Positions 12,592 to 32,691 of a DNA stretch of 64,000 bases are shown piece after piece; within the stretch, counting starts at the first letter, position 1; every line of letters starts with the position of its first letter. Under the pieces are notes generated by a model. The model ran no database searches. It saw only the letters and a list, made by a program, of their open reading frames with translations, and was not told the DNA's origin. A program made the position numbers and the translations under genes. Location of the stretch: positions 248,001 to 312,000 of the IMG/VR virus record IMGVR_UViG_3300028558_000016, one strand, 5' to 3'.

Positions 12592-12860
12592 ACATTAGCA
12601 AACATTTTGAATTCGAGGATTGGCACAAATGCTTTGCCTATTTTGATGAGATGGCAAAGCAGGAAATAAAAAATCTAAGGCTTGTGATAAGCACTCATTG
12701 GGCCTCAGAAGGATATTGGATAGAAAACACAACTGAGGAAGTTTCTTCAGAAGATTACGTTTACACACCAGAAGAAGTTCCTGCACTTATGGAAAGAGTG
12801 AAAGATGGAATTGAACAAGCTAAAATACAAGGAATGCTTGGACCTGGTTTAATACTTTAA
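12588..12860 (+). CDS. Hypothetical protein
   Basis: ATGA-coupled. Confidence 0.55.
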   Translation: MNISKHFEFEDWHKCFAYFDEMAKQEIKNLRLVISTHWASEGYWIENTTEEVSSEDYVYTPEEVPALMERVKDGIEQAKIQGMLGPGLIL

Positions 12861-19621: not shown

Positions 19622-20752
19622 ATGGCAAAGAGATTTCACAATTTTGAAGAGTTCATTCTTGAGTCGCAAAAGGCTGAAGAAGCAATCATGTCAGCTTTAA
19701 ACAAGAGGATATGGTCTGAAGTTTTCACAAGCTCTTACTTGACTGAAGCAGAAAAGGTTTGGTTTTCCAATTTCTTAACTGAGAACAACATCCCAGTGGA
19801 CATTGACAACATCAATGAATCTGTTTGGGACACCATCAAGGCAGGAATAGAAAAGGTGAAGGACTCTGGCACTGACATTGGAAAAAAGATCTCTGACAAG
19901 ATAGGAAAAGCTTATCAAGGAGCAAAACAATTCACGGCTTACATCGGAGACCTCATCAAGAAGTCTTGGGCTAAACTATTGGATTACTTCAAAAAGAAAT
20001 TCGCAGGTGTTAAGGACATCATCAAGAAAGATTACAAGAAGGCCGTTGATGGAAAAGAAATTTCAGAAGAAAAATTAGCTGCTGAATTAGAAGCTCTTGG
20101 AGAGACAGTAGATTTCTGGACGACAAAAGTTCCAGCCAAGATAGCTGACACAGTTAAAGGAAAATTCGCTAATGCAATCGTTCAAGAATGTTTAACTCAC
20201 AACGGAGAAATCCTTAATGAGCTTTGCGCATTCGATCCAATTAAAATGGATGAGATGGTGATGAAAGCTTTAAACGAAGCTGACGACAACGCAGATGCAA
20301 ACGATCCTGAGAACAAAGGAGAAGAAGGCGGAGACGCTGCACATGGAGATACCAAAGGATTATTCGGATGGTTGAACAAGATGGCGCACAAGATCTCTGA
20401 GTATCCTCCATTCAAATGGTTACATCAAATAAAAGGATTAGCTGAAAAAGGAGTAAAAGGAATTCTTAAAAAGATTTCTGAACTTACAACTAAATTGGAC
20501 GGTCCTGGAGTTTACGATTTCGCAGTGGTATCAATGATCTCTGCTGGAGCAATAGAATATTTCATTAAGCATTGGCTCGCAGAGAAGCTTGAAAAAGGAG
20601 TGTTTGGTTCTGAACCGATATTGAAGTTCATCCCAATGGGAACAACCATATTACACACTATTGAGTGGATAGCATTGATCGTGCTCATCATAGAAACAAT
20701 CAAGGAATTAACGACCGCTGGAAAAGAAGGGGACGCCGCCCCAGCACACTAA
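19622..20752 (+). CDS. Putative internal/ejected protein with C-terminal hydrophobic helices
   Basis: MAKRFHNFEEFILE; amphipathic helices; hydrophobic C-terminus. Confidence 0.6.
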   Translation: MAKRFHNFEEFILESQKAEEAIMSALNKRIWSEVFTSSYLTEAEKVWFSNFLTENNIPVDIDNINESVWDTIKAGIEKVKDSGTDIGKKISDKIGKAYQGAKQFTAYIGDLIKKSWAKLLDYFKKKFAGVKDIIKKDYKKAVDGKEISEEKLAAELEALGETVDFWTTKVPAKIADTVKGKFANAIVQECLTHNGEILNELCAFDPIKMDEMVMKALNEADDNADANDPENKGEEGGDAAHGDTKGLFGWLNKMAHKISEYPPFKWLHQIKGLAEKGVKGILKKISELTTKLDGPGVYDFAVVSMISAGAIEYFIKHWLAEKLEKGVFGSEPILKFIPMGTTILHTIEWIALIVLIIETIKELTTAGKEGDAAPAH

Positions 20753-20754
20753 GC

Positions 20755-21963
20755 ATGAAACGCATAAAGAGATTCGAGAGCTACATAAGTGAGTCTTATC
20801 TCGGAGGCTCTCGTGCTCCGCTGTATCACACTTCTCCAATCACAAACTCATATAGCATTTTACAGGAGGACAAACTAAAGTCCACTGTGATCCCTGACAA
20901 ATTTTGGTCGGCTGATTTTCCAGCTCCATCTCTAATATCATTCACAAGAAGCAAGGAATTCGTGTATGAGGATTACCCTGTCACGTTCATCGTTGACGGA
21001 GATAAATTGGAAGCAAGATTCAAAGTTCATCCAATAGATTATTTTGCAAAGACCGTTGGGCATCACATGAAGCCTAAAAGTCTAAGACAAGAAGGAGAGT
21101 TTGAATTTGAGGAAGCCGTACAGAACAAAGAAATAAACGATCTTCACAAGTACTTAATGGAGATTCGTCTAAACGATTCCTTCTTCATGTTCTATAAAAC
21201 ATATCCAAGAAACACAAGAGAAGAATATAGAGAATCATACGAAGACCTCGTTAAAGGTTTGATAGAATACAAGAAGAAGTTTAACACCAAGGTGGTTCGC
21301 AAGAACGGTAAGGAATGGACTCTTGATGACATGGAGAATGAAGCATCTGAATTCCCTATAACAGAAAACATATATCACAAAGACTCTGGAATGAGAATGT
21401 ACGTCAGCAAGGCTGCTGATGAAGACGATTACAAGGTTTATTATTCCTCATACAATCCAATGGGTGGATTCGACTCAGACACATTTTCTAAATACCTTAA
21501 CACAAACGGAATTGAGCACACAAAGATTGGTGGCAATGCCGTAAAGATGAACAAGGCCAACGTTGACAAATTAAAGAAGAGCATGCTAACTCTCGAGAGC
21601 TTAAAGGATGGAAAGGCGTTGACAAAGGCTGAGATAAATAAGATAGAATATTTTTACCATGCAACTGCCAAGAGCAATCTTGGAAACATAATGGCAAACG
21701 GAATTAGAGTTGGACCTGAGAAAGTTGTTTACCTCAGCGACACGTACGATAATGCAGCAAGATTTTTGGTGTTCAGAGGATTACCGATAATAGTATTCAA
21801 GGTAAAGGCTTCCAAGCTTAACATGGAGAAAATGGAAGAAAGCTTTGATCACAGTTATAGCTTCTTCAAGTGTCATGCATTCATGTATTATGGAAACATA
21901 CCAAAGAGTGCCATTGATTACGATTCAATAATGAAATACAACGATGAAGATAAAGAGGTTTAA
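20755..21963 (+). CDS. Putative internal head protein with two ADP-ribosyltransferase-like domains
   Basis: MKRIKRFESYISE; LYH...ISFTR...EFEE; C-terminal YHAT...IMANGI...VYLS...IP (Tpt1/KptA-like). Confidence 0.55.
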   Translation: MKRIKRFESYISESYLGGSRAPLYHTSPITNSYSILQEDKLKSTVIPDKFWSADFPAPSLISFTRSKEFVYEDYPVTFIVDGDKLEARFKVHPIDYFAKTVGHHMKPKSLRQEGEFEFEEAVQNKEINDLHKYLMEIRLNDSFFMFYKTYPRNTREEYRESYEDLVKGLIEYKKKFNTKVVRKNGKEWTLDDMENEASEFPITENIYHKDSGMRMYVSKAADEDDYKVYYSSYNPMGGFDSDTFSKYLNTNGIEHTKIGGNAVKMNKANVDKLKKSMLTLESLKDGKALTKAEINKIEYFYHATAKSNLGNIMANGIRVGPEKVVYLSDTYDNAARFLVFRGLPIIVFKVKASKLNMEKMEESFDHSYSFFKCHAFMYYGNIPKSAIDYDSIMKYNDEDKEV

Positions 21964-23175: not shown

Positions 23176-24173
23176 GACGCATAAAGCTATATGAAGAATT
23201 TGTCGTTCAACTCAATGAGCTGAACGCAAGTCCTTATTTCTGGAGATGGGACACCAACAAGACTGCAAAGTTTGAATCGCCTGACGATACTTACGAAGTA
23301 TTCTTCTTTAAAACCAAAGACGACAACACATACATAGCACATTACGAATCAAAGAAATACGGAACAAACAAATCAGGACCTGGATCAACAGGAAATGCAA
23401 TGAGAGTTCTTGCAACTGTAATGGACATCATAATAGCTTTCCTTGATCAGTTTCCTGAATACGACGTTGAATTCGTAGGAGACAAAGAAGAAGACGAGAA
23501 AGATGGTCCAACCAAGAGAGACAGAATATACAAGATGATGATGCAAGATCTTCCAGACAATTACAAATGGGAACTCGCATCAGACAAGAAAACAATTCAC
23601 ATAAGCAGGCAACACGTTTACGAAGACGTTAGCGGAATTGGTGGTGAAACATTCTACCATGGATCAACTGACAAGAATTTAGCTGGTCACAAGGGATTGC
23701 ATGTAGGAACTCGTGAGGCAGCAAAGGAAGCTCTTGAAGCAAGGATAGGAGTTCCAGCTGAAGGAGAATGGGATGGAACAAGAGAATATGGAAAGACTCT
23801 ATTAGCAGGACAAGACAGATTGAACAAGATAGAGAAGGAAGAAAAAAGATATGTGGCAACAGGTTTCAATTGTGGAAGCGATGTGCCAAAAGAAGATTAC
23901 TATCCGACAGACAGAAAGGAAAAAGCAACATACAGCGATGAGTCTGTTGTTCCAATGAACTGCAAGCCAATAATATTTCCAGTTAAAATAGTCGGTCACA
24001 TGACAAACACGCCTCAGCATCCATTGAGCGATTCCAAAGCGAATGGATTGATGAAAAGAAGCTTGACGGCAGGAAATGCTAAGAGCGGATTCTATTACAA
24101 GAACATCGGAGAGGACGAAGGGTCTATATCAGCTGTCGTTCCGGATAAGTCTTTCTTGAAACTTACCACTTAG
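23172..24173 (+). CDS. Two-domain putative internal head protein; C-terminal ART-like domain
   Basis: MRRIKLYEEF; TGNAMRVLATVMDII domain; FYHGST...GLHVGT..AA. Confidence 0.55.
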   Translation: MRRIKLYEEFVVQLNELNASPYFWRWDTNKTAKFESPDDTYEVFFFKTKDDNTYIAHYESKKYGTNKSGPGSTGNAMRVLATVMDIIIAFLDQFPEYDVEFVGDKEEDEKDGPTKRDRIYKMMMQDLPDNYKWELASDKKTIHISRQHVYEDVSGIGGETFYHGSTDKNLAGHKGLHVGTREAAKEALEARIGVPAEGEWDGTREYGKTLLAGQDRLNKIEKEEKRYVATGFNCGSDVPKEDYYPTDRKEKATYSDESVVPMNCKPIIFPVKIVGHMTNTPQHPLSDSKANGLMKRSLTAGNAKSGFYYKNIGEDEGSISAVVPDKSFLKLTT

Positions 24174-24299
24174 TTATTAACATTATAAATTCATAACTTG
24201 CTCACAAGTATGATACTAATGACGGATTAATGCCTACATTTGTGAGCCGTCAGTTTTTGGCCTTTGAGGTTCTCAGTATTAATATTTTGAATTAGTATA

Positions 24300-24488
24300 A
24301 TGCCAAAACAAATTTCAACTTATTCGTTGCAACAAGAGATTGTAGACAATGAAACCTACCATAATTTTTTCGTGAATTTCAGAAACCAAGGTGGAGATTT
24401 ATCCTTGCTTAAGGATTATTATCTCAAAGAGGAATTCCATTACAACAAGAGCTTAACCGAATCACTTAATGAAATTCCAAAGCCATGA
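24300..24488 (+). CDS. Small hypothetical protein
   Basis: ORF after an intergenic gap; ATGA-coupled to the next gene. Confidence 0.45.
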   Translation: MPKQISTYSLQQEIVDNETYHNFFVNFRNQGGDLSLLKDYYLKEEFHYNKSLTESLNEIPKP

Positions 24489-24742
24489 GACATAATAAAA
24501 CTTTTTCGGTGTATCTTATGAGATACATTTATGGAACACACTATGTTGGAGTCAATATAGATCCTGTCAAACATATTATAGAATTCAATAAAAGGAAAAA
24601 ATGTCAAGCCGTTCTCATCTATATTATATCCGATTTATCCATTATAGATGCAATAGACATTCAATTAAATCTTAAGAGTCAGAGCACCAATACTCTCGAA
24701 GAATATTTCCAAGAACACGGTAAACAAGTTATACATGTCTGA
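24485..24742 (+). CDS. Degenerate GIY-YIG (YhbQ/UPF0213-like) protein
   Basis: VYLMR...HYVG..D; canonical catalytic Arg and Glu positions hold His and Gln. Confidence 0.5.
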   Translation: MRHNKTFSVYLMRYIYGTHYVGVNIDPVKHIIEFNKRKKCQAVLIYIISDLSIIDAIDIQLNLKSQSTNTLEEYFQEHGKQVIHV

Positions 24743-24917
24743 AGATTTAAAATATAAAATGTTCTTGATTGACATCAAGAATCTGTGTGATCAACACGAC
24801 GACTTAGCGCCGATCTCTAATCTAATAAAAAATGGAATGACACGTTTGGAAAAAAAGCCTGGTCCGATCATAGAAAAAGAATTAAAGAAACCTATACCTC
24901 TTTATTTATTAAATTGA
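24735..24917 (+). CDS. Small hypothetical protein
   Basis: Overlapping co-oriented ORF. Confidence 0.45.
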   Translation: MSEDLKYKMFLIDIKNLCDQHDDLAPISNLIKNGMTRLEKKPGPIIEKELKKPIPLYLLN

Positions 24918-25278
24918 TGTGCATCTTCAGTATGTCACACAATTCCTCGCCGGCCTCTTTGAGATCGGAATCCTCGTAATACCAATTGATGGAAGCATTG
25001 TGAAACGCTTCCAATTTCCTGAATATCTTTATTAATTGCAACAGGCTTGATGGAGAGAAATATCCAAGGTCCACGTTGATCAGGAAATAAGAATTCTTGT
25101 CTTGAACTTTTAGGAAAGCATCAAGCCAATCTATTATTGGAAGATAAAATGATTTTGGATCTGTTGGAACTGAAACCCCTTTGATGTTAAAGATCCCATC
25201 CTTTGGAATGTACTCGAACGATGGAGACTTTTCTGTGGCCTTCATCCTTAAGGGGATATTGTACAAACCATCACTCAC
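24892..25278 (-). CDS. SiaC-family (DUF1987) regulatory protein
   Basis: ATEKSP...G.F.IKG.S.P.D...FY.PIIDWL...YFSPSS...LE...INWYY...EAGEE. Confidence 0.8.
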   Translation of the reverse strand: MSDGLYNIPLRMKATEKSPSFEYIPKDGIFNIKGVSVPTDPKSFYLPIIDWLDAFLKVQDKNSYFLINVDLGYFSPSSLLQLIKIFRKLEAFHNASINWYYEDSDLKEAGEELCDILKMHINLINKEV

Positions 25279-25294
25279 ATGTTAAATATACTAA

Positions 25295-26026
25295 TTATAA
25301 AGACAATCCTAAAATATTTCTATTATAAATCTTAGAAGCAAATAGATGATTGAGGACAGGGAATACGCTCTTCTTTGTGTCATAGCTTAAATCGCTCTCA
25401 ACAGCCACAAATAGATCATCAGACTTGTTCTCCTCTTCTAACACCTTAATCTTAACGTCTGTGAAATCTGCTTTGGTCGGCATGTCATAATATTTATGCA
25501 ATGAGAAAGTAACGTCCTTAAATGTGGAATCATAGATGAACTTGTAACACTCGAACACAGGTGAACCCGCATATCTCAATAACAAATATCCGGTGCTCTT
25601 GTCCAATGTTTTTCCAATGTAATAAAGCTTGATGTGTGATTCGATCTTCTTGAAAACCTCACCGCCCTGCTTTATGGATTCCTGCAATTTTTTTAATGAC
25701 CACTTAGCGATCTTAATTGCTTCCATCAAATCAGGATTGTTATCAGGTTGAGAGGCAACCTTCTTGAAATATTCTCTTTGTTCATCTGTAGGTGATGGAA
25801 CGTCTCTCAATTCGAGAAGAGATCTTATTGTAAGAAAGCATTCGATGTTTTTCGAATGGTATCGTGTTTCCTGCAGATAATCTGCAAGGTTGTTTCTCTT
25901 GAAACCTCTTTCCACCTTTTGAAGATAATCCATTAAAATGTACTGCTTATGCTCGAAATCGATAGGCGATTCGAGGAACCAAATGGGTGATAGTTTCATG
26001 CCGTTTGTAGTTTTCTTGCGTGCCAT
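25295..26026 (-). CDS. Conserved hypothetical protein of Bacteroidota type
   Basis: WFLESPIDFEHKQYILMDYLQ N-terminal motif. Confidence 0.6.
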   Translation of the reverse strand: MARKKTTNGMKLSPIWFLESPIDFEHKQYILMDYLQKVERGFKRNNLADYLQETRYHSKNIECFLTIRSLLELRDVPSPTDEQREYFKKVASQPDNNPDLMEAIKIAKWSLKKLQESIKQGGEVFKKIESHIKLYYIGKTLDKSTGYLLLRYAGSPVFECYKFIYDSTFKDVTFSLHKYYDMPTKADFTDVKIKVLEEENKSDDLFVAVESDLSYDTKKSVFPVLNHLFASKIYNRNILGLSL

Positions 26027-26033
26027 GTTTCAG

Positions 26034-26063
26034 TTTATATATTCATTAAATTTTCAATATATA
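26034..26063. promoter_or_regulatory. Back-to-back AATATATA motifs (divergent late promoters)
   Basis: tttatatattca (minus) and caatatatagg (plus) between divergent genes. Confidence 0.5.
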
Positions 26064-26090
26064 GGATAAGTAAAACCCATCAATCCATTC

Positions 26091-28211
26091 ATGAACGGTG
26101 CTCAATTAAAAATCAAACAAATCAAGGGTCTCAACGCAGAGCTCGCTGATAAGCTTTCAAAGAGTTTAGGCGGAACTGTTACCGGACCATTGACGATAGG
26201 TGGACCATTAGTGGTCACTGGGCCAACCATCATAAACACTGATCTTTCTTTACAAGGAGCTATAGTGGATTTTTATGGAAGTCCTGGACCTCCAGGATGG
26301 GTGCTAACCTCCACAGGAACAGCAACACAATGGGTGGATCCTTTAGGACCATTAGGTGTTTCAGGATTTAGTGGAACATCAGGTATCTCAGGTTACAGCG
26401 GAACATCAGGTGTTTCTGGTTACACAGGTGTAAGCGGTTATTCAGGTGTAAGCGGATTCTCTGGATATTCCGGAGACAGCGGTACAAGTGGAACAACAGG
26501 TATTTCAGGAACAAGCGGTGTTTCAGGTTTTTCTGGATACTCAGGCGTATCAGGATACTCTGGAACTTCTGGTATTTCAGGAACGAGCGGTATAAGTGGA
26601 ACAACAGGTGTAAGCGGATTTTCAGGATACACTGGAGCTTCAGGAACTTCTGGATTTACTGGTGTGTCAGGTTTTTCTGGATACTCAGGCGTGAGTGGTT
26701 TTTCTGGATACACAGGAACTTCTGGTATTTCAGGAACAAGCGGTATTAGTGGAACTTCTGGAATTTCTGGATACAGTGGTGTTTCAGGTTTTTCTGGTGT
26801 TAGTGGATGGTCAGGATCAAGCGGTATTTCTGGATTCAGTGGTTATTCAGGTGTAAGTGGATTCACAGGTGTGAGCGGTTACACTGGTGTTTCTGGATTC
26901 ACTGGAACTTCTGGTATTTCTGGATCATCTGGATATTTTGGACAAGATGGTATGTCAGGTTTTTCTGGATTCTCTGGATTCGGAATTTCTGGTTACTCAG
27001 GATATTCTGGAAACAATGGAGTTGCCGGTGGAGCTTTATACTATTTAAGAGATGAAGACTCAGATGTCCCAGGCTTTAAAGAATTAGATATAAATCCAGA
27101 TGGAATAGATCCTGAAGGATCTTATACAGCTGCTTGCGATAATACAACCGGCGAAGTATTAATAAAACAATTCTTAACTTTTCCATCAAACCCAGATCAG
27201 CTTTATATTTCAGGTGGTTCATGGATATTCGATACTTATGCCTCAGTAGACAACTCAGGCGGAGTTTCAAATATCGTAATAAGATTTTACAAGAGAGATC
27301 AATTTGGTATTGAGACTGAATTGTTCAACGTAACGACTGCAGAGATAAATGTCGTATCTCCTACATTATTTTCAAAAGAAATTCTCCAAGGAGAATTCAA
27401 TATAGCATTAACTGATAGATTATTAGTAAAGTATTTTGCAAAAACTACTTCAACGACAACAATTAACGTCAGCATTTATTTAGAAGGAAATACGCATGCA
27501 ACACATATTCACTCTCCTGTATCTTTCATAGGAGCTTCAGGTTTCTCTGGATGGTCAGGTTTTAGTGGAACTTCAGGAACTTCTGGATTCACAGGAGTTT
27601 CAGGATTTACGGGTGTGAGCGGATATAGCGGTGTTTCAGGTTTTTCTGGTGTAAGCGGATTCACAGGTGTCAGTGGTGTTTCAGGTTTCTCTGGATATTC
27701 TGGAACAAGTGGAACATCTGGTTATAGTGGAACATCTGGTTTTTCAGGCGTGTCAGGTTACTCTGGAACTTCTGGATTCTCTGGATATTCTGGAACATCA
27801 GGCTTCACAGGCGTCAGCGGTTTCTCAGGTATTTCTGGAGACTCAGGTGTTAGCGGATTCACAGGAGCAAGTGGAACATCCGGTTTTTCAGGCGTGTCAG
27901 GTTACTCTGGAACTTCTGGATTCTCTGGATATTCTGGAACAAGTGGAACATCCGGTTATAGTGGATTTAGCGGAGTTTCTGGATATTCTGGTGTAAGTGG
28001 ATTCTCAGGTGTTTCAGGATTTAGCGGATACTCAGGAACATCCGGATTCTCTGGTTACAGCGGAACAAGTGGATTTACCGGTGTCAGTGGATTCAGCGGC
28101 GTTAGCGGATTTTCAGGAACCTCTGGATTATCTGGAACTTCTGGATTTTCAGGAACCTCTGGATTTGATGCAGGTATTCTTGCATTGATCATCAATAGTC
28201 TTGGCTTGTAA
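26091..28211 (+). CDS. Collagen-like (Gly-X-Ser)n fibre protein with a central globular domain
   Basis: Two long [12 protein letters not shown] tracts flanking a roughly 170 aa beta-rich domain. Confidence 0.75.
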   Translation: MNGAQLKIKQIKGLNAELADKLSKSLGGTVTGPLTIGGPLVVTGPTIINTDLSLQGAIVDFYGSPGPPGWVLTSTGTATQWVDPLGPLGVSGFSGTSGISGYSGTSGVSGYTGVSGYSGVSGFSGYSGDSGTSGTTGISGTSGVSGFSGYSGVSGYSGTSGISGTSGISGTTGVSGFSGYTGASGTSGFTGVSGFSGYSGVSGFSGYTGTSGISGTSGISGTSGISGYSGVSGFSGVSGWSGSSGISGFSGYSGVSGFTGVSGYTGVSGFTGTSGISGSSGYFGQDGMSGFSGFSGFGISGYSGYSGNNGVAGGALYYLRDEDSDVPGFKELDINPDGIDPEGSYTAACDNTTGEVLIKQFLTFPSNPDQLYISGGSWIFDTYASVDNSGGVSNIVIRFYKRDQFGIETELFNVTTAEINVVSPTLFSKEILQGEFNIALTDRLLVKYFAKTTSTTTINVSIYLEGNTHATHIHSPVSFIGASGFSGWSGFSGTSGTSGFTGVSGFTGVSGYSGVSGFSGVSGFTGVSGVSGFSGYSGTSGTSGYSGTSGFSGVSGYSGTSGFSGYSGTSGFTGVSGFSGISGDSGVSGFTGASGTSGFSGVSGYSGTSGFSGYSGTSGTSGYSGFSGVSGYSGVSGFSGVSGFSGYSGTSGFSGYSGTSGFTGVSGFSGVSGFSGTSGLSGTSGFSGTSGFDAGILALIINSLGL
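26352..27010 (+). repeat. Coding 9-nt-period Gly-X-Ser repeat tract (limits approximate)
   Basis: Translation [14 protein letters not shown]... Confidence 0.85.
27531..28165 (+). repeat. Coding Gly-X-Ser repeat tract containing an exact 60-nt direct repeat
   Basis: 27738-27797 is identical to 27882-27941 (144 nt apart). Confidence 0.85.
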
Positions 28212-29005: not shown

Positions 29006-31132
29006 ATGTCAAAGAAAGCAATAGATTTCGTATTCACAGGAGCAACCACACCAATCGCTTCTTACGATTCAACAAAGACCAACATTGGAACTTTGATCAA
29101 ACAATATACAGGAGCTCTCGCAACAGATAAGTTTGCAGGCCCAGAAATAGTTTCTGTCGCAAGACCAGGTGAAGCTTCCACTTCCATATTCGGAGGATTT
29201 CCATATATCGTACAATTTTCTACGACAATTGATTGGGTTTTCCTTGCAGAAAACTCTGCTGCCGCTGTGACAAGAAGAATAATCTGGTATGAATTTAATA
29301 AGACTACTCAAGTCTTTACGTGGAAAGGATTCATCACACTAACATACCCAGCTGCGACCGCACACACCATAAGAGGTTTAAGCGTAACAAAAGATAATTA
29401 CACCACTGGAACTGTAGCCGTCTCAGGAACTACTGTGACTGGAACAGGTTCTTTATGGTTAACTGAACCACAATCATTAGGTTCAAGAATAGGATTTGGA
29501 ACAACCGATCCAACCGCTGTAACAACGTGGTTTGAAATCTCTGCTATAGGATCAGACACATCCATAACATTAACATCAACTGCAGGAAGCATACCTGCTG
29601 GAACTGCTTATGTCATTGAAGATTTAAGAGTCTATACTGCGACAACAAATGCTACATTAACCAATGGCGGTTTATTTGTTACTAAAGGTTTAAGAATAGA
29701 AAACTTTTCAACGGGTGGAACAACAATTTCAGCTGCTGTAACAACCGATAACATAAGAGCTGTTTACTGGTTGGCTGATGCTTCAACTGTCACAAATACT
29801 GTAGCAGGTGGTTTATATGTCGACACGAGATCTTCATGGACTAACCAAGTTGCTTACATCGTCAACGTGACAGCTGCGACAACTCCAGCTATTTATGTCT
29901 ATAATACAAGAGCAGCCTTAACGCTTGCCGCAGGAAAAGACACAACAACAAACACCATAAAGACCGGAGTTCAAACCGTAACAGGTAACGTTTCTCAGGT
30001 AGGAAATGGAATTCTTGCAACGCTTTCTCATGGACCCGGTTCAGGAGTTAAGTGTCTTTATTTTGCAACAACCTCAAGAATAATCAGAGTAGACCTTGCA
30101 AATATTACCGCAGCTTCTACAACTTTCGTATCAGACTCGATGGTTGAGGTTCCACCAGGATCTTCGACAACATATCCTTTGACTGCAGTAATGTCTCATG
30201 TTTTATATTCTTCGATGATCGACAGACTTGTAATTCTTACGACCTCAGCAGCAGGACAAAGAGGTTATGTTACACAATACAACACGACCTCAGCACAATT
30301 CGATCACATATTTTTAATAGATGACAAGAACCAGGATCAATCAACTGCTGCGGTAGGATCAATTCCTTATCCATCTCTTTCAAACACGCAGATGGTAGGA
30401 GGGATGCTAAATGGAAGAATGTTTATTGTAAGAAACTCTGCTGCGGCAACTTTAAACCAGATGTACAATCTTCCAATAGGAGCACATTGGGCTTATACTT
30501 CTACATCAAATCAGGTCTTGATAACTCCAAGCATTCCAACAACGAATGCCTTGAAATTCTATAGACTTTATGTAAACGAGATAAAAAGATTAGGAACAGA
30601 TCCTTATGTAATTCAACCGGAACCTTACAAAATGTATGCAAGAACTTCTGGTATTTCTACAAATTTAGGAACATGGACTCTCATAAACGATGATGGAGAT
30701 CTTTCAGGATTAACACCTACTTCCGAAATACAAATCAAATTGGAATTCAACATTCTTGGAAGATATTGCATTCCTTCGAGAATAATGTCTTTGGCAGTCG
30801 TCTTTGAAGACACCACGACGGATTCACACTATGAACCTTCTATCGCGAACTCGAATGTTTCTACAAACGTATTCGCCTTCAGACAATCAACGGCTTTCGG
30901 ATCAAACATCCCTAACTTAAGGATTCAATTGTTCAACGCTGTAACAGGAGTTCCTATAATAGATGACAACGTAACGTCTTCAGCTTTTGGAACTTTCCAG
31001 TATTCTTCTAACAACGGATTATCGTGGAATGCATGGAGCAATACCCAGGATGTTGTAGGAAATTACATAAGATATACAGCAACTTCTCTGCCAGGATCTA
31101 CGAGAATTAGAGCTCTATTGACGCAAGCATAA
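29006..31132 (+). CDS. Large Thr-rich beta-structured virion/tail protein
   Basis: 708 aa, T/S/G/A-rich; YTTGTVAVSGTTVTGTG tail-protein-like motif. Confidence 0.65.
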   Translation: MSKKAIDFVFTGATTPIASYDSTKTNIGTLIKQYTGALATDKFAGPEIVSVARPGEASTSIFGGFPYIVQFSTTIDWVFLAENSAAAVTRRIIWYEFNKTTQVFTWKGFITLTYPAATAHTIRGLSVTKDNYTTGTVAVSGTTVTGTGSLWLTEPQSLGSRIGFGTTDPTAVTTWFEISAIGSDTSITLTSTAGSIPAGTAYVIEDLRVYTATTNATLTNGGLFVTKGLRIENFSTGGTTISAAVTTDNIRAVYWLADASTVTNTVAGGLYVDTRSSWTNQVAYIVNVTAATTPAIYVYNTRAALTLAAGKDTTTNTIKTGVQTVTGNVSQVGNGILATLSHGPGSGVKCLYFATTSRIIRVDLANITAASTTFVSDSMVEVPPGSSTTYPLTAVMSHVLYSSMIDRLVILTTSAAGQRGYVTQYNTTSAQFDHIFLIDDKNQDQSTAAVGSIPYPSLSNTQMVGGMLNGRMFIVRNSAAATLNQMYNLPIGAHWAYTSTSNQVLITPSIPTTNALKFYRLYVNEIKRLGTDPYVIQPEPYKMYARTSGISTNLGTWTLINDDGDLSGLTPTSEIQIKLEFNILGRYCIPSRIMSLAVVFEDTTTDSHYEPSIANSNVSTNVFAFRQSTAFGSNIPNLRIQLFNAVTGVPIIDDNVTSSAFGTFQYSSNNGLSWNAWSNTQDVVGNYIRYTATSLPGSTRIRALLTQA

Positions 31133-31150: not shown

Positions 31151-31300
31151 ATGCCAGTAGATGATATAGTTTTCCAAAGCAATCCACCATTCATTTTAGA
31201 AGTTCCCGCACAGACACCAGGAACAATAAGAGCATTATCGCTTGATGGAGTATTCGATTTTACAAATGCTACTGAAATAATAACGATTCAAATCAGCTAA
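31151..31300 (+). CDS. Small protein (49 aa, not in the ORF track)
   Basis: MPVDDIVFQSNPPF...ITIQIS; TAATG-coupled to the next gene. Confidence 0.5.
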   Translation: MPVDDIVFQSNPPFILEVPAQTPGTIRALSLDGVFDFTNATEIITIQIS

Positions 31301-32691
31301 TGATTAGATTAGACACCATAAACAAATCACTAAGGATCTTCTCAGATGCCACAGCAACGACAACAGAACCAGTCTTTGTTACGGCATTCGATGACATCAA
31401 TTCCACGACTCCGGTGTTAACGCCTGGAAGCAGTGATGGTGCAACTGTTGGAAATACTCCACAAACTGCAGTAGCTTCTCCGGTAGCTTCCATCTACAGA
31501 AATGTAAAATATGTAAACGTATTCAACAGTGACACAGTTTCACACGTCATCACCGTTGAACTATTAAACAATGCTACCACCAGAACCTTAATAAAAGTAA
31601 CACTTAAAACGAGTGAGCAATTAATATACAATGATGGAGATGGCTGGGGAGTTATCACAGCTTTAGGAGAAAAGAAAGTAACCGGTGTTTCAGGATTCAG
31701 TGGATTCTCAGGAGTTTCTGGAATTGGAACCTCAGGATTTTCTGGATATTCTGGAGTAAGCGGCTTCTCAGGTGTTTCAGGTTTTTCTGGAATTTCTGGA
31801 TATTCCGGTGTTTCTGGATTCTCTGGAACCTCAGGATTTTCTGGATATTCTGGAGTAAGCGGTTATTCTGGTGTCAGCGGATTCTCTGGTTATTCTGGAG
31901 TTTCTGGATTTACTGGAGTCTCCGGACAAACAGGTGTTTCGGGTTTCTCTGGAATTTCTGGTCAATCTGGCGTTAGCGGATTCACAGGAGTTTCTGGATT
32001 TTCCGGCTACACAGGCGTTTCAGGTTTTACGGGTGTTAGCGGATTTTCAGGCATTTCTGGTGATTCAGGTGTTAGTGGTTTTACTGGATATTCTGGAATT
32101 TCTGGATACAGCGGAACTTCCGGTTTCTCTGGATATTCTGGAATAAGTGGAACTTCAGGCATCTCAGGTTTTACAGGAGTAAGCGGTTACACAGGTGTTT
32201 CAGGTTTCACGGGAGTCAGCGGATTCTCTGGATATTCTGGAGTGTCGGGCTATTCCGGAACTTCAGGATTCTCAGGTTATTCCGGTACTTCCGGCTTCAC
32301 AGGAACCTCAGGTTTTTCTGGAATTTCTGGAGATCCTTCTCTTGGATTAATCACAATGAGAGCATCAAGAGCTTCAGCAAATACCACAAACATTTATCTG
32401 AGAGATATGGATGGCAATCCAATGAACCAAGCTCCTTTGGTGATGCCATACAATGGAACGATAATAAATATTTCTGCATCATCTAACACTGCTGGTCCTG
32501 GCGCATGGTCTGCAGAAGTAAGAGATAATGGAACTTTAATAGCAGGAGCAGTGATAAATATGACAGCAGTTCAAACATCAAACTTTGGAACATATTCGGT
32601 GAACGTTAATGCTGGTGCACTTCTAATGATATTCATGACAGGAACTTCCATAGATAGACCTGCAATAACAGTATTAATAAAGAGAAGATAA
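31300..32691 (+). CDS. Collagen-like (Gly-X-Ser)n fibre protein
   Basis: Paralogous N-domain, repeat tract at about 31684-32331, C-terminal beta domain. Confidence 0.75.
   Translation: MIRLDTINKSLRIFSDATATTTEPVFVTAFDDINSTTPVLTPGSSDGATVGNTPQTAVASPVASIYRNVKYVNVFNSDTVSHVITVELLNNATTRTLIKVTLKTSEQLIYNDGDGWGVITALGEKKVTGVSGFSGFSGVSGIGTSGFSGYSGVSGFSGVSGFSGISGYSGVSGFSGTSGFSGYSGVSGYSGVSGFSGYSGVSGFTGVSGQTGVSGFSGISGQSGVSGFTGVSGFSGYTGVSGFTGVSGFSGISGDSGVSGFTGYSGISGYSGTSGFSGYSGISGTSGISGFTGVSGYTGVSGFTGVSGFSGYSGVSGYSGTSGFSGYSGTSGFTGTSGFSGISGDPSLGLITMRASRASANTTNIYLRDMDGNPMNQAPLVMPYNGTIINISASSNTAGPGAWSAEVRDNGTLIAGAVINMTAVQTSNFGTYSVNVNAGALLMIFMTGTSIDRPAITVLIKRR

What the first reader, a model, noticed from the sequence alone, without database searches (positions are those of the whole stretch)
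24892..25278. SiaC homolog whose phospho-acceptor Thr is replaced by Pro
Seen: the SiaC/DUF1987 pattern is intact, but YFNTSS reads YFSPSS (Pro76, codon 25053-25051), and no SiaA, SiaB or SiaD gene is in the window. Established: in Pseudomonas SiaABCD, SiaC is phosphorylated on this Thr by SiaB and the unphosphorylated form activates the diguanylate cyclase SiaD. Inference: a non-phosphorylatable mimic that could lock host aggregation/biofilm or second-messenger signalling, or trap the kinase. Same logic as the pseudo-ACP.
Basis: partly seen in the sequence, partly recalled or inferred. Interest (0 to 1): 0.7.

Follow-up and report, generated by a model that had tools for sequence, protein, structure and literature searches.

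The report
Phage SiaC-like switch protein lacking phospho-site
A 482-kb phage from rhizosphere metagenomes carries a lone copy of a bacterial "partner-switch" signalling protein (SiaC family) whose phosphorylated threonine is replaced by proline, so it probably cannot be switched off by the usual kinase; its target is unknown.

Summary
ORF 24892-25278(-) is a SiaC/DUF1987 protein (Pfam 82.5 bits; AF2 pLDDT 93; TM 0.82 to P. aeruginosa SiaC). Pro76 (CCA, 25053-25051) aligns with the phospho-acceptor Thr68 and is the first residue of helix alpha2. The 482-kb phage genome has no SiaB-like kinase (DUF6272), HATPase_c_2, PP2C, GGDEF or Hanks kinase.

The substitution is unusual. 109 of 110 cellular Bacteroidales domains have Thr/Ser there and none has Pro; most of these genes sit beside, or are fused to, a SiaB-like kinase gene. 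All 15 other viral copies from IMG/VR also have Thr/Ser. The gene belongs to a 10-member clade found only on phage-like contigs, and 7 members lost the hydroxyl (4 Pro, 3 Ile). The gene is under purifying selection (dN/dS about 0.13), and Pro is kept with a synonymous codon change.

A constitutively unphosphorylated decoy or antagonist is the best reading, with only weak in-silico support for kinase binding (0.39 against controls 0.00). The c-di-GMP/SiaD/biofilm output is not supported: five SiaC-rich Bacteroidales genomes have no GGDEF gene, and the protein fails the SiaC equivalog cut-off. Host and target are unknown, and Ser75 could be an alternative acceptor.

The parts
24892..25278 (-). 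Gene for a 128-aa orphan SiaC-family (DUF1987) protein
   Evidence: ORF. Pfam PF09345 at 82.5 bits. AF2 model with pLDDT 93.3. Foldseek top hits are SiaC 6kko/6kkp/7e6g with TM 0.82 and rmsd 1.7. dN/dS 0.12-0.14 against L002 and L003.
25051..25053 (-). Codon CCA for Pro76, at the position of the SiaC phospho-acceptor Thr68
   Evidence: Sequence. Alignment to 6kko_C and 6k4f. Pro codons are CCA, CCA and CCG in the window, L002 and L003. No variant at this codon in runs X2, X3 and X5.
25054..25056 (-). Codon TCT for Ser75, the N-cap of helix alpha2 and a possible alternative acceptor; it replaces the family's usual Asn
   Evidence: Ser is at this column in 9 of 10 phage-clade members, whereas Asn is there in 131 of 175 representative domains.
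25012..25053 (-). Helix alpha2 (residues 76-89), the most conserved segment within the Pro subclade; in SiaC this helix carries Thr68 and contacts SiaD
   Evidence: DSSP on the model gives H76-89. Invariant P76, S78, L82, I83, K84, I85, F86, K88 and L89 in alignment A1. Role of alpha2 in SiaC from PMC8457831.
25295..26026 (-). Co-oriented 243-aa gene of unknown function, ending 16 nt upstream of the SiaC-like start; probably co-transcribed
   Evidence: ORF. The same pair is found in related phages L002 and L003. Homologues also occur without a SiaC-like gene downstream. No Pfam, PHROG or PADLOC hit. AF2 pLDDT 89 with no informative fold match.
26027..26090 (.). Divergent intergenic region between the 243-aa/SiaC-like pair and the collagen-like tail-fibre gene (26091-28211, +); it holds one sigma-70-like consensus match on the minus strand (26083-26056)
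   Evidence: consensus match only, no enrichment over shuffles. Tail-fibre PHROG hits.

Best explanation
The gene encodes an orphan, phage-borne member of the SiaC (DUF1987) family of partner-switch proteins. It keeps the fold and the conserved alpha2 face, but the canonical phospho-acceptor is replaced by Pro76.

In bacteria these proteins are switched by a cognate SiaB-like kinase (DUF6272) and a PP2C phosphatase; the unphosphorylated form is the one that binds partners. The most likely mechanism is therefore that the phage protein is expressed in the infected cell as a permanently 'unphosphorylated' SiaC-like protein. It would either occupy a host SiaB-like kinase as a dead-end pseudo-substrate, or bind the downstream target of a host SiaC-like protein without being switched off. 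Either way it would lock one host partner-switch pathway in one state.

Shown here: family, fold, Pro at the acceptor, orphan status, rarity of the substitution, its derived state within a phage clade, and purifying selection. Inferred: that it meets host kinases or targets, and the direction of the effect. The output is unknown and is probably not c-di-GMP.
For: Family and fold:
- Pfam match, alignment to solved SiaC, AF2 model and Foldseek hits.

The acceptor is normally kept:
- 109 of 110 unique DUF1987 domains from 8 Bacteroidales-type genomes have Thr/Ser; none has Pro.
- 105 of 114 single-domain representatives have Thr/Ser.
- 15 of 15 non-redundant IMG/VR viral copies have Thr/Ser, although none has a kinase gene within 4 kb. 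The acceptor is therefore not simply free to drift in phages.

The loss is clade-specific:
- The query lies in a 10-member clade (support 0.92-0.94), all on phage-like contigs. Four members have Pro, three Ile and three Thr.
- Fisher p=1.6e-8 against cellular domains and p=2.5e-4 against other viral copies. These are raw counts, and the losses represent only about two independent events.

Selection:
- dN/dS is 0.12-0.14 with dS about 1.8. Pro is retained through a CCA-to-CCG change.
- alpha2 is the most conserved segment in the Pro subclade.

Cellular logic:
- DUF6272 is the SiaB homologue (6kko_A, E=5e-14).
- It is immediately adjacent to DUF1987 in 75 of 79 loci, and adjacent or fused in 44 of 75.
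- Thr68 phosphorylation blocks partner binding in SiaC (PMC8457831; bioRxiv 10.1101/674879).

The phage lacks a kinase, phosphatase or cyclase of its own.

Predicted complex with a Bacteroidales DUF6272 kinase:
- ipSAE 0.39 (three runs: 0.38-0.39), best of 3 controls 0.00. The tool's verdict is 'weak support'.
- The mark was reached by 58 of 80 solved complexes and 2 of 110 mismatched pairs. At a score of 0.60 or under, only 7 of those 80 solved complexes reached it, as did both mismatches that passed.
- The three runs agree in at least 80% of contacts, and the partner's pLDDT is at least 82.

From established knowledge, not tested here: acceptor-to-Ala mutants of SpoIIAA and RsbV are constitutively active antagonists.
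Against: - The host is unidentified. Only the lack of Shine-Dalgarno motifs (5% of genes, below the 12% background) points to Bacteroidota.
- Across that phylum the family was found in only 3 of 61 genomes, so the host may not have such modules.
- The complex score is weak, and it may only reflect family likeness to the solved SiaB-SiaC complex.
- Pro is not Ala, so it may alter the kinase or target interface. In SiaC the Thr68 side chain itself hydrogen-bonds SiaD.
- Ser75, Ser77 and Ser78 remain available as possible acceptors.
- There is no expression data; no RNA run was found to hold the sequence.
- The gene is an accessory insert that is absent from several related phages, so it is not essential to the phage.
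Confidence: 0.4

Rival explanations
1. Neofunctionalised scaffold. The SiaC fold has been recruited for a phage-internal role, such as binding the co-transcribed 243-aa protein or another phage protein, perhaps linked to the adjacent tail-fibre module. It has no link to host partner-switch signalling. The acceptor was lost because phosphorylation is irrelevant in this lineage.
For: - The 243-aa gene lies 16-17 nt upstream on the same strand in the window and in L002, with a 64-nt gap in L003.
- The acceptor column varies across the clade (Thr, Ile, Pro), as expected if it is not needed.
- The host is unknown, and the family is patchy in Bacteroidota.
- The phage encodes two sigma factors that could be internal targets.
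Against: - Homologues of the 243-aa protein at 49-66% identity occur without any SiaC-like gene, so the pair is not obligate.
- The 243-aa model has no informative fold match.
- All other nearly invariant family positions are retained.
- The other orphan phage lineages keep Thr/Ser, 15 of 15, which argues that phage copies usually remain coupled to kinases.
Confidence: 0.3
2. Still phospho-regulated. The acceptor has shifted by one residue to Ser75 (or to Ser77/Ser78), so the protein is an ordinary switchable SiaC-like protein used by the phage to read host signalling.
For: - Ser75 replaces the usual Asn in 9 of 10 clade members. That includes the three that still have Thr76 (YFSTKS, FFSTQS), so Ser75 arose before the Thr was lost.
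- Ser75 is the N-cap of alpha2, directly next to the canonical site.
- Ser78 is nearly invariant in the family.
Against: - In SiaC only Thr68 was found phosphorylated, although Ser69 and Ser70 are adjacent (bioRxiv 10.1101/674879).
- Cellular members with Ser at position 75 still keep Thr/Ser at position 76.
- Ser and Asn are interchangeable N-cap residues, so Ser75 needs no phospho role (general structural knowledge).
Confidence: 0.15
3. One reading: a SiaC mimic that locks a SiaD-type diguanylate cyclase, and hence c-di-GMP, aggregation or biofilm formation.
For: Same family and fold as P. aeruginosa SiaC, where the unphosphorylated form activates SiaD.
Against: - Identity to SiaC is only about 18-22%, and the protein fails the SiaC equivalog cut-off (45.7 against 150 bits).
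- There are 0 GGDEF genes in five Bacteroidales genomes that hold 11-23 SiaC-like genes each.
- No GGDEF gene was seen among the 20 neighbours of DUF1987 genes scanned in G126.
- In SiaC the N67/T68/S69 triad contacts SiaD, and here it reads S-P-S.
Confidence: 0.05
4. Decaying passenger gene with no function.
For: It is an accessory gene missing from related phages, and no RNA evidence was found.
Against: - dN/dS is 0.12-0.14 at saturated dS.
- The ORF is intact in four diverged relatives.
- pLDDT is 93.
- All core family residues are kept.
Confidence: 0.03

Closest known systems
SiaC (PA0170) of the Pseudomonas aeruginosa SiaABCD partner-switch system (PDB 6KKO, 6KKP, 6K4F, 7E6G)
   Same: Same Pfam family (PF09345) and same fold (TM 0.82, rmsd 1.7 A). 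Same size. The conserved motif lies at the start of alpha2.
   Different: - Identity is about 18-22%, and the protein fails the equivalog model.
- The acceptor Thr68 is replaced by Pro, and Asn67 by Ser.
- There is no siaA, siaB or siaD partner in the genome.
- It is encoded by a phage.
- The likely host lineages lack GGDEF cyclases.
Cellular Bacteroidales DUF6272-DUF1987 (SiaB-like kinase / SiaC-like) modules, uncharacterised
   Same: Closest cellular sequence relatives (about 33-40% identity). Same domain and same conserved positions.
   Different: - Cellular copies keep Thr/Ser (109 of 110).
- They are adjacent or fused to the kinase gene.
- The phage copy has Pro and no kinase.
Orphan SiaC-like genes of other large phages in IMG/VR (L196-L215, contigs up to 676 kb)
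   Same: Phage-borne single-domain DUF1987 proteins of 123-136 aa with no kinase gene within 4 kb.
   Different: - They belong to other lineages in the tree.
- All keep Thr/Ser.
- Two of the five records searched encode their own DUF6272 kinase elsewhere in the genome.
Non-phosphorylatable STAS antagonists: SpoIIAA-S58A and RsbV-S56A mutants (from established knowledge, not tested here)
   Same: Same logic: loss of the acceptor at the N-terminus of the equivalent helix makes the antagonist insensitive to its kinase.
   Different: - A different, only structurally related family: STAS hits have TM 0.43-0.48.
- Those are laboratory mutants to Ala. This is a natural Pro variant in a virus.

Membership tests
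SiaC family / DUF1987 (Pfam PF09345) | Sequence match above the Pfam gathering score over the whole domain | tested here: met
   82.5 bits against a cut-off of 24.5, profile positions 1-119 of 120.
SiaC family / DUF1987 (Pfam PF09345) | SiaC fold (STAS-like alpha/beta) | tested here: met
   AF2 pLDDT 93.3. Foldseek 6kko_D E=3.3e-9, TM 0.82, rmsd 1.7.
SiaC family / DUF1987 (Pfam PF09345) | Phospho-acceptor Thr/Ser at the N-terminus of helix alpha2 (Thr68 in SiaC) | tested here: not met
   Pro76 aligns with Thr68 and is the first residue of alpha2. Thr/Ser is present in 109 of 110 cellular domains.
SiaC proper (NCBIfam NF038265 equivalog, biofilm regulation phosphoprotein) | Score above the equivalog cut-off | tested here: not met
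   45.7 bits against a cut-off of 150.
SiaABCD-type partner-switch system | Cognate SiaB-like kinase (DUF6272/GHKL) encoded nearby | tested here: not met
   No PF19788 or PF13581 match in the whole 482-kb phage record. The neighbours have no such domain.
SiaABCD-type partner-switch system | PP2C phosphatase (SiaA-like, SpoIIE domain) | tested here: not met
   No PF07228 match in the phage.
SiaABCD-type partner-switch system | GGDEF diguanylate cyclase output (SiaD) | tested here: not met
   No PF00990 match in the phage, and none in five SiaC-rich Bacteroidales genomes.
SiaABCD-type partner-switch system | Physical binding to a SiaB-like kinase | tested here: inconclusive
   Complex prediction gave ipSAE 0.39 with best control 0.00, verdict 'weak support'. 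The mark was reached by 58 of 80 solved complexes and 2 of 110 mismatched pairs; at 0.60 or under, by only 7 of the 80 solved complexes and by both mismatches that passed. The three runs agree in at least 80% of contacts, and the partner's pLDDT is at least 82. The kinase is from an arbitrary Bacteroidales genome, not the host.
SiaABCD-type partner-switch system | Reversible phosphorylation in vivo or in vitro | not testable with these tools
   Needs a kinase assay or mass spectrometry.

The most novel reading that the evidence does not exclude
Large phages of Shine-Dalgarno-less (probably Bacteroidota) hosts repeatedly capture SiaC-like partner-switch proteins. In one phage-only clade the protein evolved into a kinase-proof decoy (Thr to Pro or Ile) that jams or permanently triggers a host SiaB/SiaC/PP2C pathway. 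This would be the first viral takeover of a bacterial partner-switching network, and a natural pseudo-substrate inhibitor of a SiaB-type kinase.
Probability: 0.3. Interest if true: 0.8.

Novelty: new variant of a known kind. Interest (0 to 1): 0.55.

Why it matters
Partner-switch modules (kinase, phosphatase, antagonist) are a main way for bacteria to make stress and lifestyle decisions. The SiaB/SiaC type is greatly expanded in some Bacteroidales: up to 23 SiaC-like and 70 PP2C genes per genome here. It is unstudied there; the paper library holds one paper that mentions DUF1987 and none that mentions DUF6272.

No PHROG family, GenBank phage record or BFVD structure matched this phage protein. 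A phage-encoded, kinase-insensitive antagonist would show that viruses target this regulatory layer. It would also give a natural tool, a pseudo-substrate, for finding what these modules control. If instead Ser75 is phosphorylated, that would reveal plasticity of the acceptor site in the family.

Tried and rejected
- The word-indexed homologue search found only 3 close relatives.
- The search for related loci in viral contigs with the close-relative alignment found nothing. Alignments that included the query had no conserved stretch for genome contigs, so a cellular-only alignment was used. That makes loci L012-L091 pattern-biased towards YFNTSSS. They were used only for gene context and as a genome handle, not for motif statistics.
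- The genome search 'of' does not accept a taxon name.
- The 243-aa neighbour gave no Pfam, NCBIfam, PHROG or PADLOC hit, and no significant PDB fold match. There is one uncharacterised AFDB cluster match (TM 0.73) and weak COMMD-like hits with probability at or below 0.23. It was rejected as an obligate partner because its homologues occur without the SiaC-like gene.
- The PADLOC Csn2 hit for the SiaC-like protein (E=0.0013, 16.5 bits) was judged to be chance.
- Host identification failed. The window has no tRNA. The TAnnTTTG motif is only mildly enriched upstream of genes. The sister cellular genome of P0063 is not held. Cluster look-ups gave no taxonomy.
- No RNA run was shown to hold the locus, so expression is untested.
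- The promoter/terminator scan showed no enrichment over shuffles.

Full report
**1. What is there**

The window is bases 248001-312000 of a 482,156-bp IMG/VR virus record that CheckV rates 100% complete. The record has 36.8% G+C. Only 5% of its genes have a Shine-Dalgarno-like motif, below the 12% background, which suggests a Bacteroidota-type host but does not prove one. The same DNA occurs in at least six rhizosphere metagenome runs.

The minus strand at 24892-25278 holds a 128-aa ORF with a GTG start. It matches Pfam PF09345 (SiaC family, formerly DUF1987) over the full profile at 82.5 bits. phmmer against the PDB aligns it with P. aeruginosa SiaC, placing YFSPSS over YLNTSS, so Pro76 (CCA, 25053-25051) corresponds to Thr68. 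Thr68 is the residue phosphorylated by SiaB and dephosphorylated by SiaA, and its phosphorylation blocks binding to SiaD (PMC8457831; bioRxiv 10.1101/674879).

An AlphaFold2 model built on 73 homologues has pLDDT 93.3. Helix alpha2 spans residues 76-89, so Pro76 is its first residue and Ser75 is its N-cap. This matches the position of Thr68 at the N-terminus of SiaC alpha2. Foldseek's eight best PDB hits are all SiaC chains, with TM up to 0.82 and rmsd 1.7 A. STAS antagonists follow far behind at TM 0.43-0.48.

**2. Orphan status**

The whole phage record has a single DUF1987 copy. It has no HATPase_c_2, SpoIIE/PP2C, GGDEF, DUF6272 or Hanks-kinase match. It does encode two sigma-70-family proteins far from this locus.

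The gene lies 16 nt downstream of a co-oriented 243-aa gene (25295-26026). That pair is divergent from a block of collagen-like tail-fibre genes. The same 243-aa-plus-SiaC-like pair is found in two related phage contigs, L002 and L003. Three other homologues of the 243-aa protein, at 49-66% identity, have no SiaC-like gene downstream. The SiaC-like gene is therefore an accessory insert at a variable slot. The 243-aa protein models well (pLDDT 89) but has no informative family or fold match.

**3. Is the Pro unusual?**

- *Representative proteins.* An exhaustive phmmer search of 1.84 billion representatives found 2,296 relatives. In the best 150 (175 domains), the acceptor column is Thr in 95, Ser in 46 and Pro in 8. 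Three of the Pro cases are the phage's own close relatives, and the other five are degenerate domains of tandem proteins. Among 114 single-domain representatives outside the phage clade, 105 have Thr/Ser and none has Pro.
- *Cellular genomes.* The family is patchy in Bacteroidota: 3 of 61 genomes phylum-wide. It is strongly expanded in one order, in 68 of 151 genomes, with up to 23 paralogues each. I fetched essentially all matches from eight such genomes. That gave 110 unique domains: Thr 78, Ser 31, Gly 1, Pro 0.
- *Other phages.* An IMG/VR scan found 20 further viral loci (15 non-redundant), several on contigs of 313-676 kb. All have Thr/Ser at the site, and none has a kinase gene within 4 kb. 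They fall into several separate lineages in the tree.

**4. A phage-only clade that lost the acceptor**

In FastTree trees of 285 and 300 domains, the query and its three close relatives (all Pro) sit in a 10-member clade with support 0.92-0.94. The other members are P0033, P0042 and P0028 (Thr) and P0027, P0030 and P0059 (Ile). Every member lies on a contig of densely packed, mostly unannotated small genes without a DUF6272 neighbour. Several of these contigs share other genes with this phage.

Seven of the ten members lack a hydroxyl at the site, compared with 1 of 110 cellular and 0 of 15 other viral copies. Fisher tests give p=1.6e-8 and p=2.5e-4. These are raw counts, and phylogenetically they amount to about two events.

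The gene is under purifying selection: dN/dS is 0.12-0.14 at dS about 1.8. The Pro codon differs synonymously among relatives (CCA, CCA, CCG). Within the Pro subclade, alpha2 is the most conserved segment. All other nearly invariant family positions are retained.

**5. What the cellular relatives do**

In the Bacteroidales genome G126, the genes flanking DUF1987 genes are mostly DUF6272 proteins. These occur as single proteins (180-193 aa), as tandem proteins (about 380 aa), or fused as DUF6272x2-SiaC (441-503 aa). One flanking gene is a SpoIIE PP2C phosphatase. DUF6272 is the SiaB family: the protein at L148:3392-3973 matches 6kko chain A at E=5e-14.

Across the fetched loci, a DUF6272 gene is immediately adjacent to the DUF1987 gene in 75 of 79 cases in the pattern-selected set. 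In the unbiased paralogue set it is adjacent or fused in 44 of 75. The five genomes checked hold 8-70 PP2C genes each and no GGDEF gene.

These are therefore kinase/phosphatase/antagonist partner-switch modules whose output is not c-di-GMP. No paper in the library mentions DUF6272, and only the SiaC-SiaD structure paper mentions DUF1987.

**6. Mechanism**

The best-supported reading is a kinase-insensitive SiaC-like protein. It would act either as a pseudo-substrate that ties up a host SiaB-like kinase, or as an antagonist that stays bound to the pathway's target. This follows from three points:
- the family's logic, in which the unphosphorylated form is the binding form;
- the clade-specific, selected loss of the acceptor;
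- retention of the rest of the conserved surface.

A complex prediction with an arbitrary Bacteroidales DUF6272 kinase gave ipSAE 0.39 (three runs, 0.38-0.39) against 0.00 for the best of three controls. The tool's verdict is 'weak support'. The mark was reached by 58 of 80 solved complexes and 2 of 110 mismatched pairs. At scores of 0.60 or below it was reached by only 7 of those 80 solved complexes, and by both mismatches that passed. The runs agree in at least 80% of contacts, and the partner's pLDDT is at least 82. The pass may simply reflect likeness to the solved SiaB-SiaC complex.

Rivals, in order of weight:
- a phage-internal role unrelated to host signalling;
- a shifted acceptor at Ser75. 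Ser75 is a clade hallmark that arose before Thr76 was lost, so this cannot be dismissed;
- gene decay, which the selection analysis effectively refutes.

**7. Verdict**

The protein is a member of the SiaC Pfam family by sequence and fold. It is not a SiaC orthologue (45.7 bits against 150). It also fails the family's functional hallmark, the acceptor residue, and lacks the system context.

It is a new variant of a known kind: a natural, phage-borne, acceptor-less partner-switch protein. No PHROG family, GenBank phage record or BFVD structure matched it. Interest is moderate to good. The pattern is clear and testable, but the host, the partner and the direction of the effect are all inferred.

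Noticed in passing
L196-L215 (IMG/VR contigs); L216 and L217 (records G211 and G212): Twenty IMG/VR viral contigs, including phages of 313-676 kb, carry orphan DUF1987 genes with an intact Thr/Ser acceptor. Two huge phages (640 kb with terminal repeats, and 676 kb) also encode their own DUF6272 SiaB-like kinase about 50 kb from the SiaC-like gene. Some phages therefore carry a kinase-substrate pair.
   Followed up: partly
G126, G001, G133, G136, G076 (loci L092-L191): Some Bacteroidales-type genomes hold 11-23 SiaC-like genes, 8-70 SpoIIE PP2C genes and no GGDEF gene. They also have DUF6272x2-SiaC fusion proteins of 441-503 aa. This is a large partner-switch expansion that appears to be unstudied.
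   Followed up: partly
window 25224: Run X3 carries a G>T variant on the + strand, which changes Pro19 to Thr in the SiaC-like protein. Pro19 is a nearly invariant family position, so this is a strain variant at a conserved residue.
   Followed up: no
proteins P0040, P0093, P0150, P0167: Four single-domain DUF1987 representatives have Asp at the acceptor column (for example FFNDDS). These may be natural phosphomimics, the opposite locked state. Their genomic context was not checked.
   Followed up: no
window 25295-26026 (-): A 243-aa protein conserved in at least 20 metagenomic relatives (49-81% identity, plus one at about 31%). It models confidently (pLDDT 89: a helical N-terminal half and an alpha/beta C-terminal half). 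It has no family or fold assignment beyond one uncharacterised AFDB cluster (TM 0.73).
   Followed up: partly
L002 5780-6526; L003 635-1081: A GIY-YIG/NUMOD3 homing-endonuclease-like gene sits just upstream of the 243-aa gene in two related phages. It is absent at that place in this window, which marks the locus as a variable region.
   Followed up: no
window 26091-28211, 29006-31132 and 31300-32691 (+): The 26091-28211 and 31300-32691 genes are long collagen-like (G-x-S/T repeat) tail-fibre genes with many PHROG tail-fibre hits. The 29006-31132 gene has only one weak tail-fibre hit. The repeats are also the only part of the 24000-27000 stretch searched that matches the 735-kb uncultured phages LR756501 and LR756503 (63% identity).
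   Followed up: no
window 20665-21963 (+): The C-terminal part of this 432-aa ORF weakly matches an RNA 2'-phosphotransferase PHROG (phrog_5470, E=1.7e-4) and matches phrog_38345 at E=4e-14.
   Followed up: no
G000 448436-448636 and 12651-12827 (outside the window): The phage encodes two sigma-70 region-2 proteins (ORFs of 354 and 210 aa). These could be targets of a phage-internal regulatory circuit.
   Followed up: no
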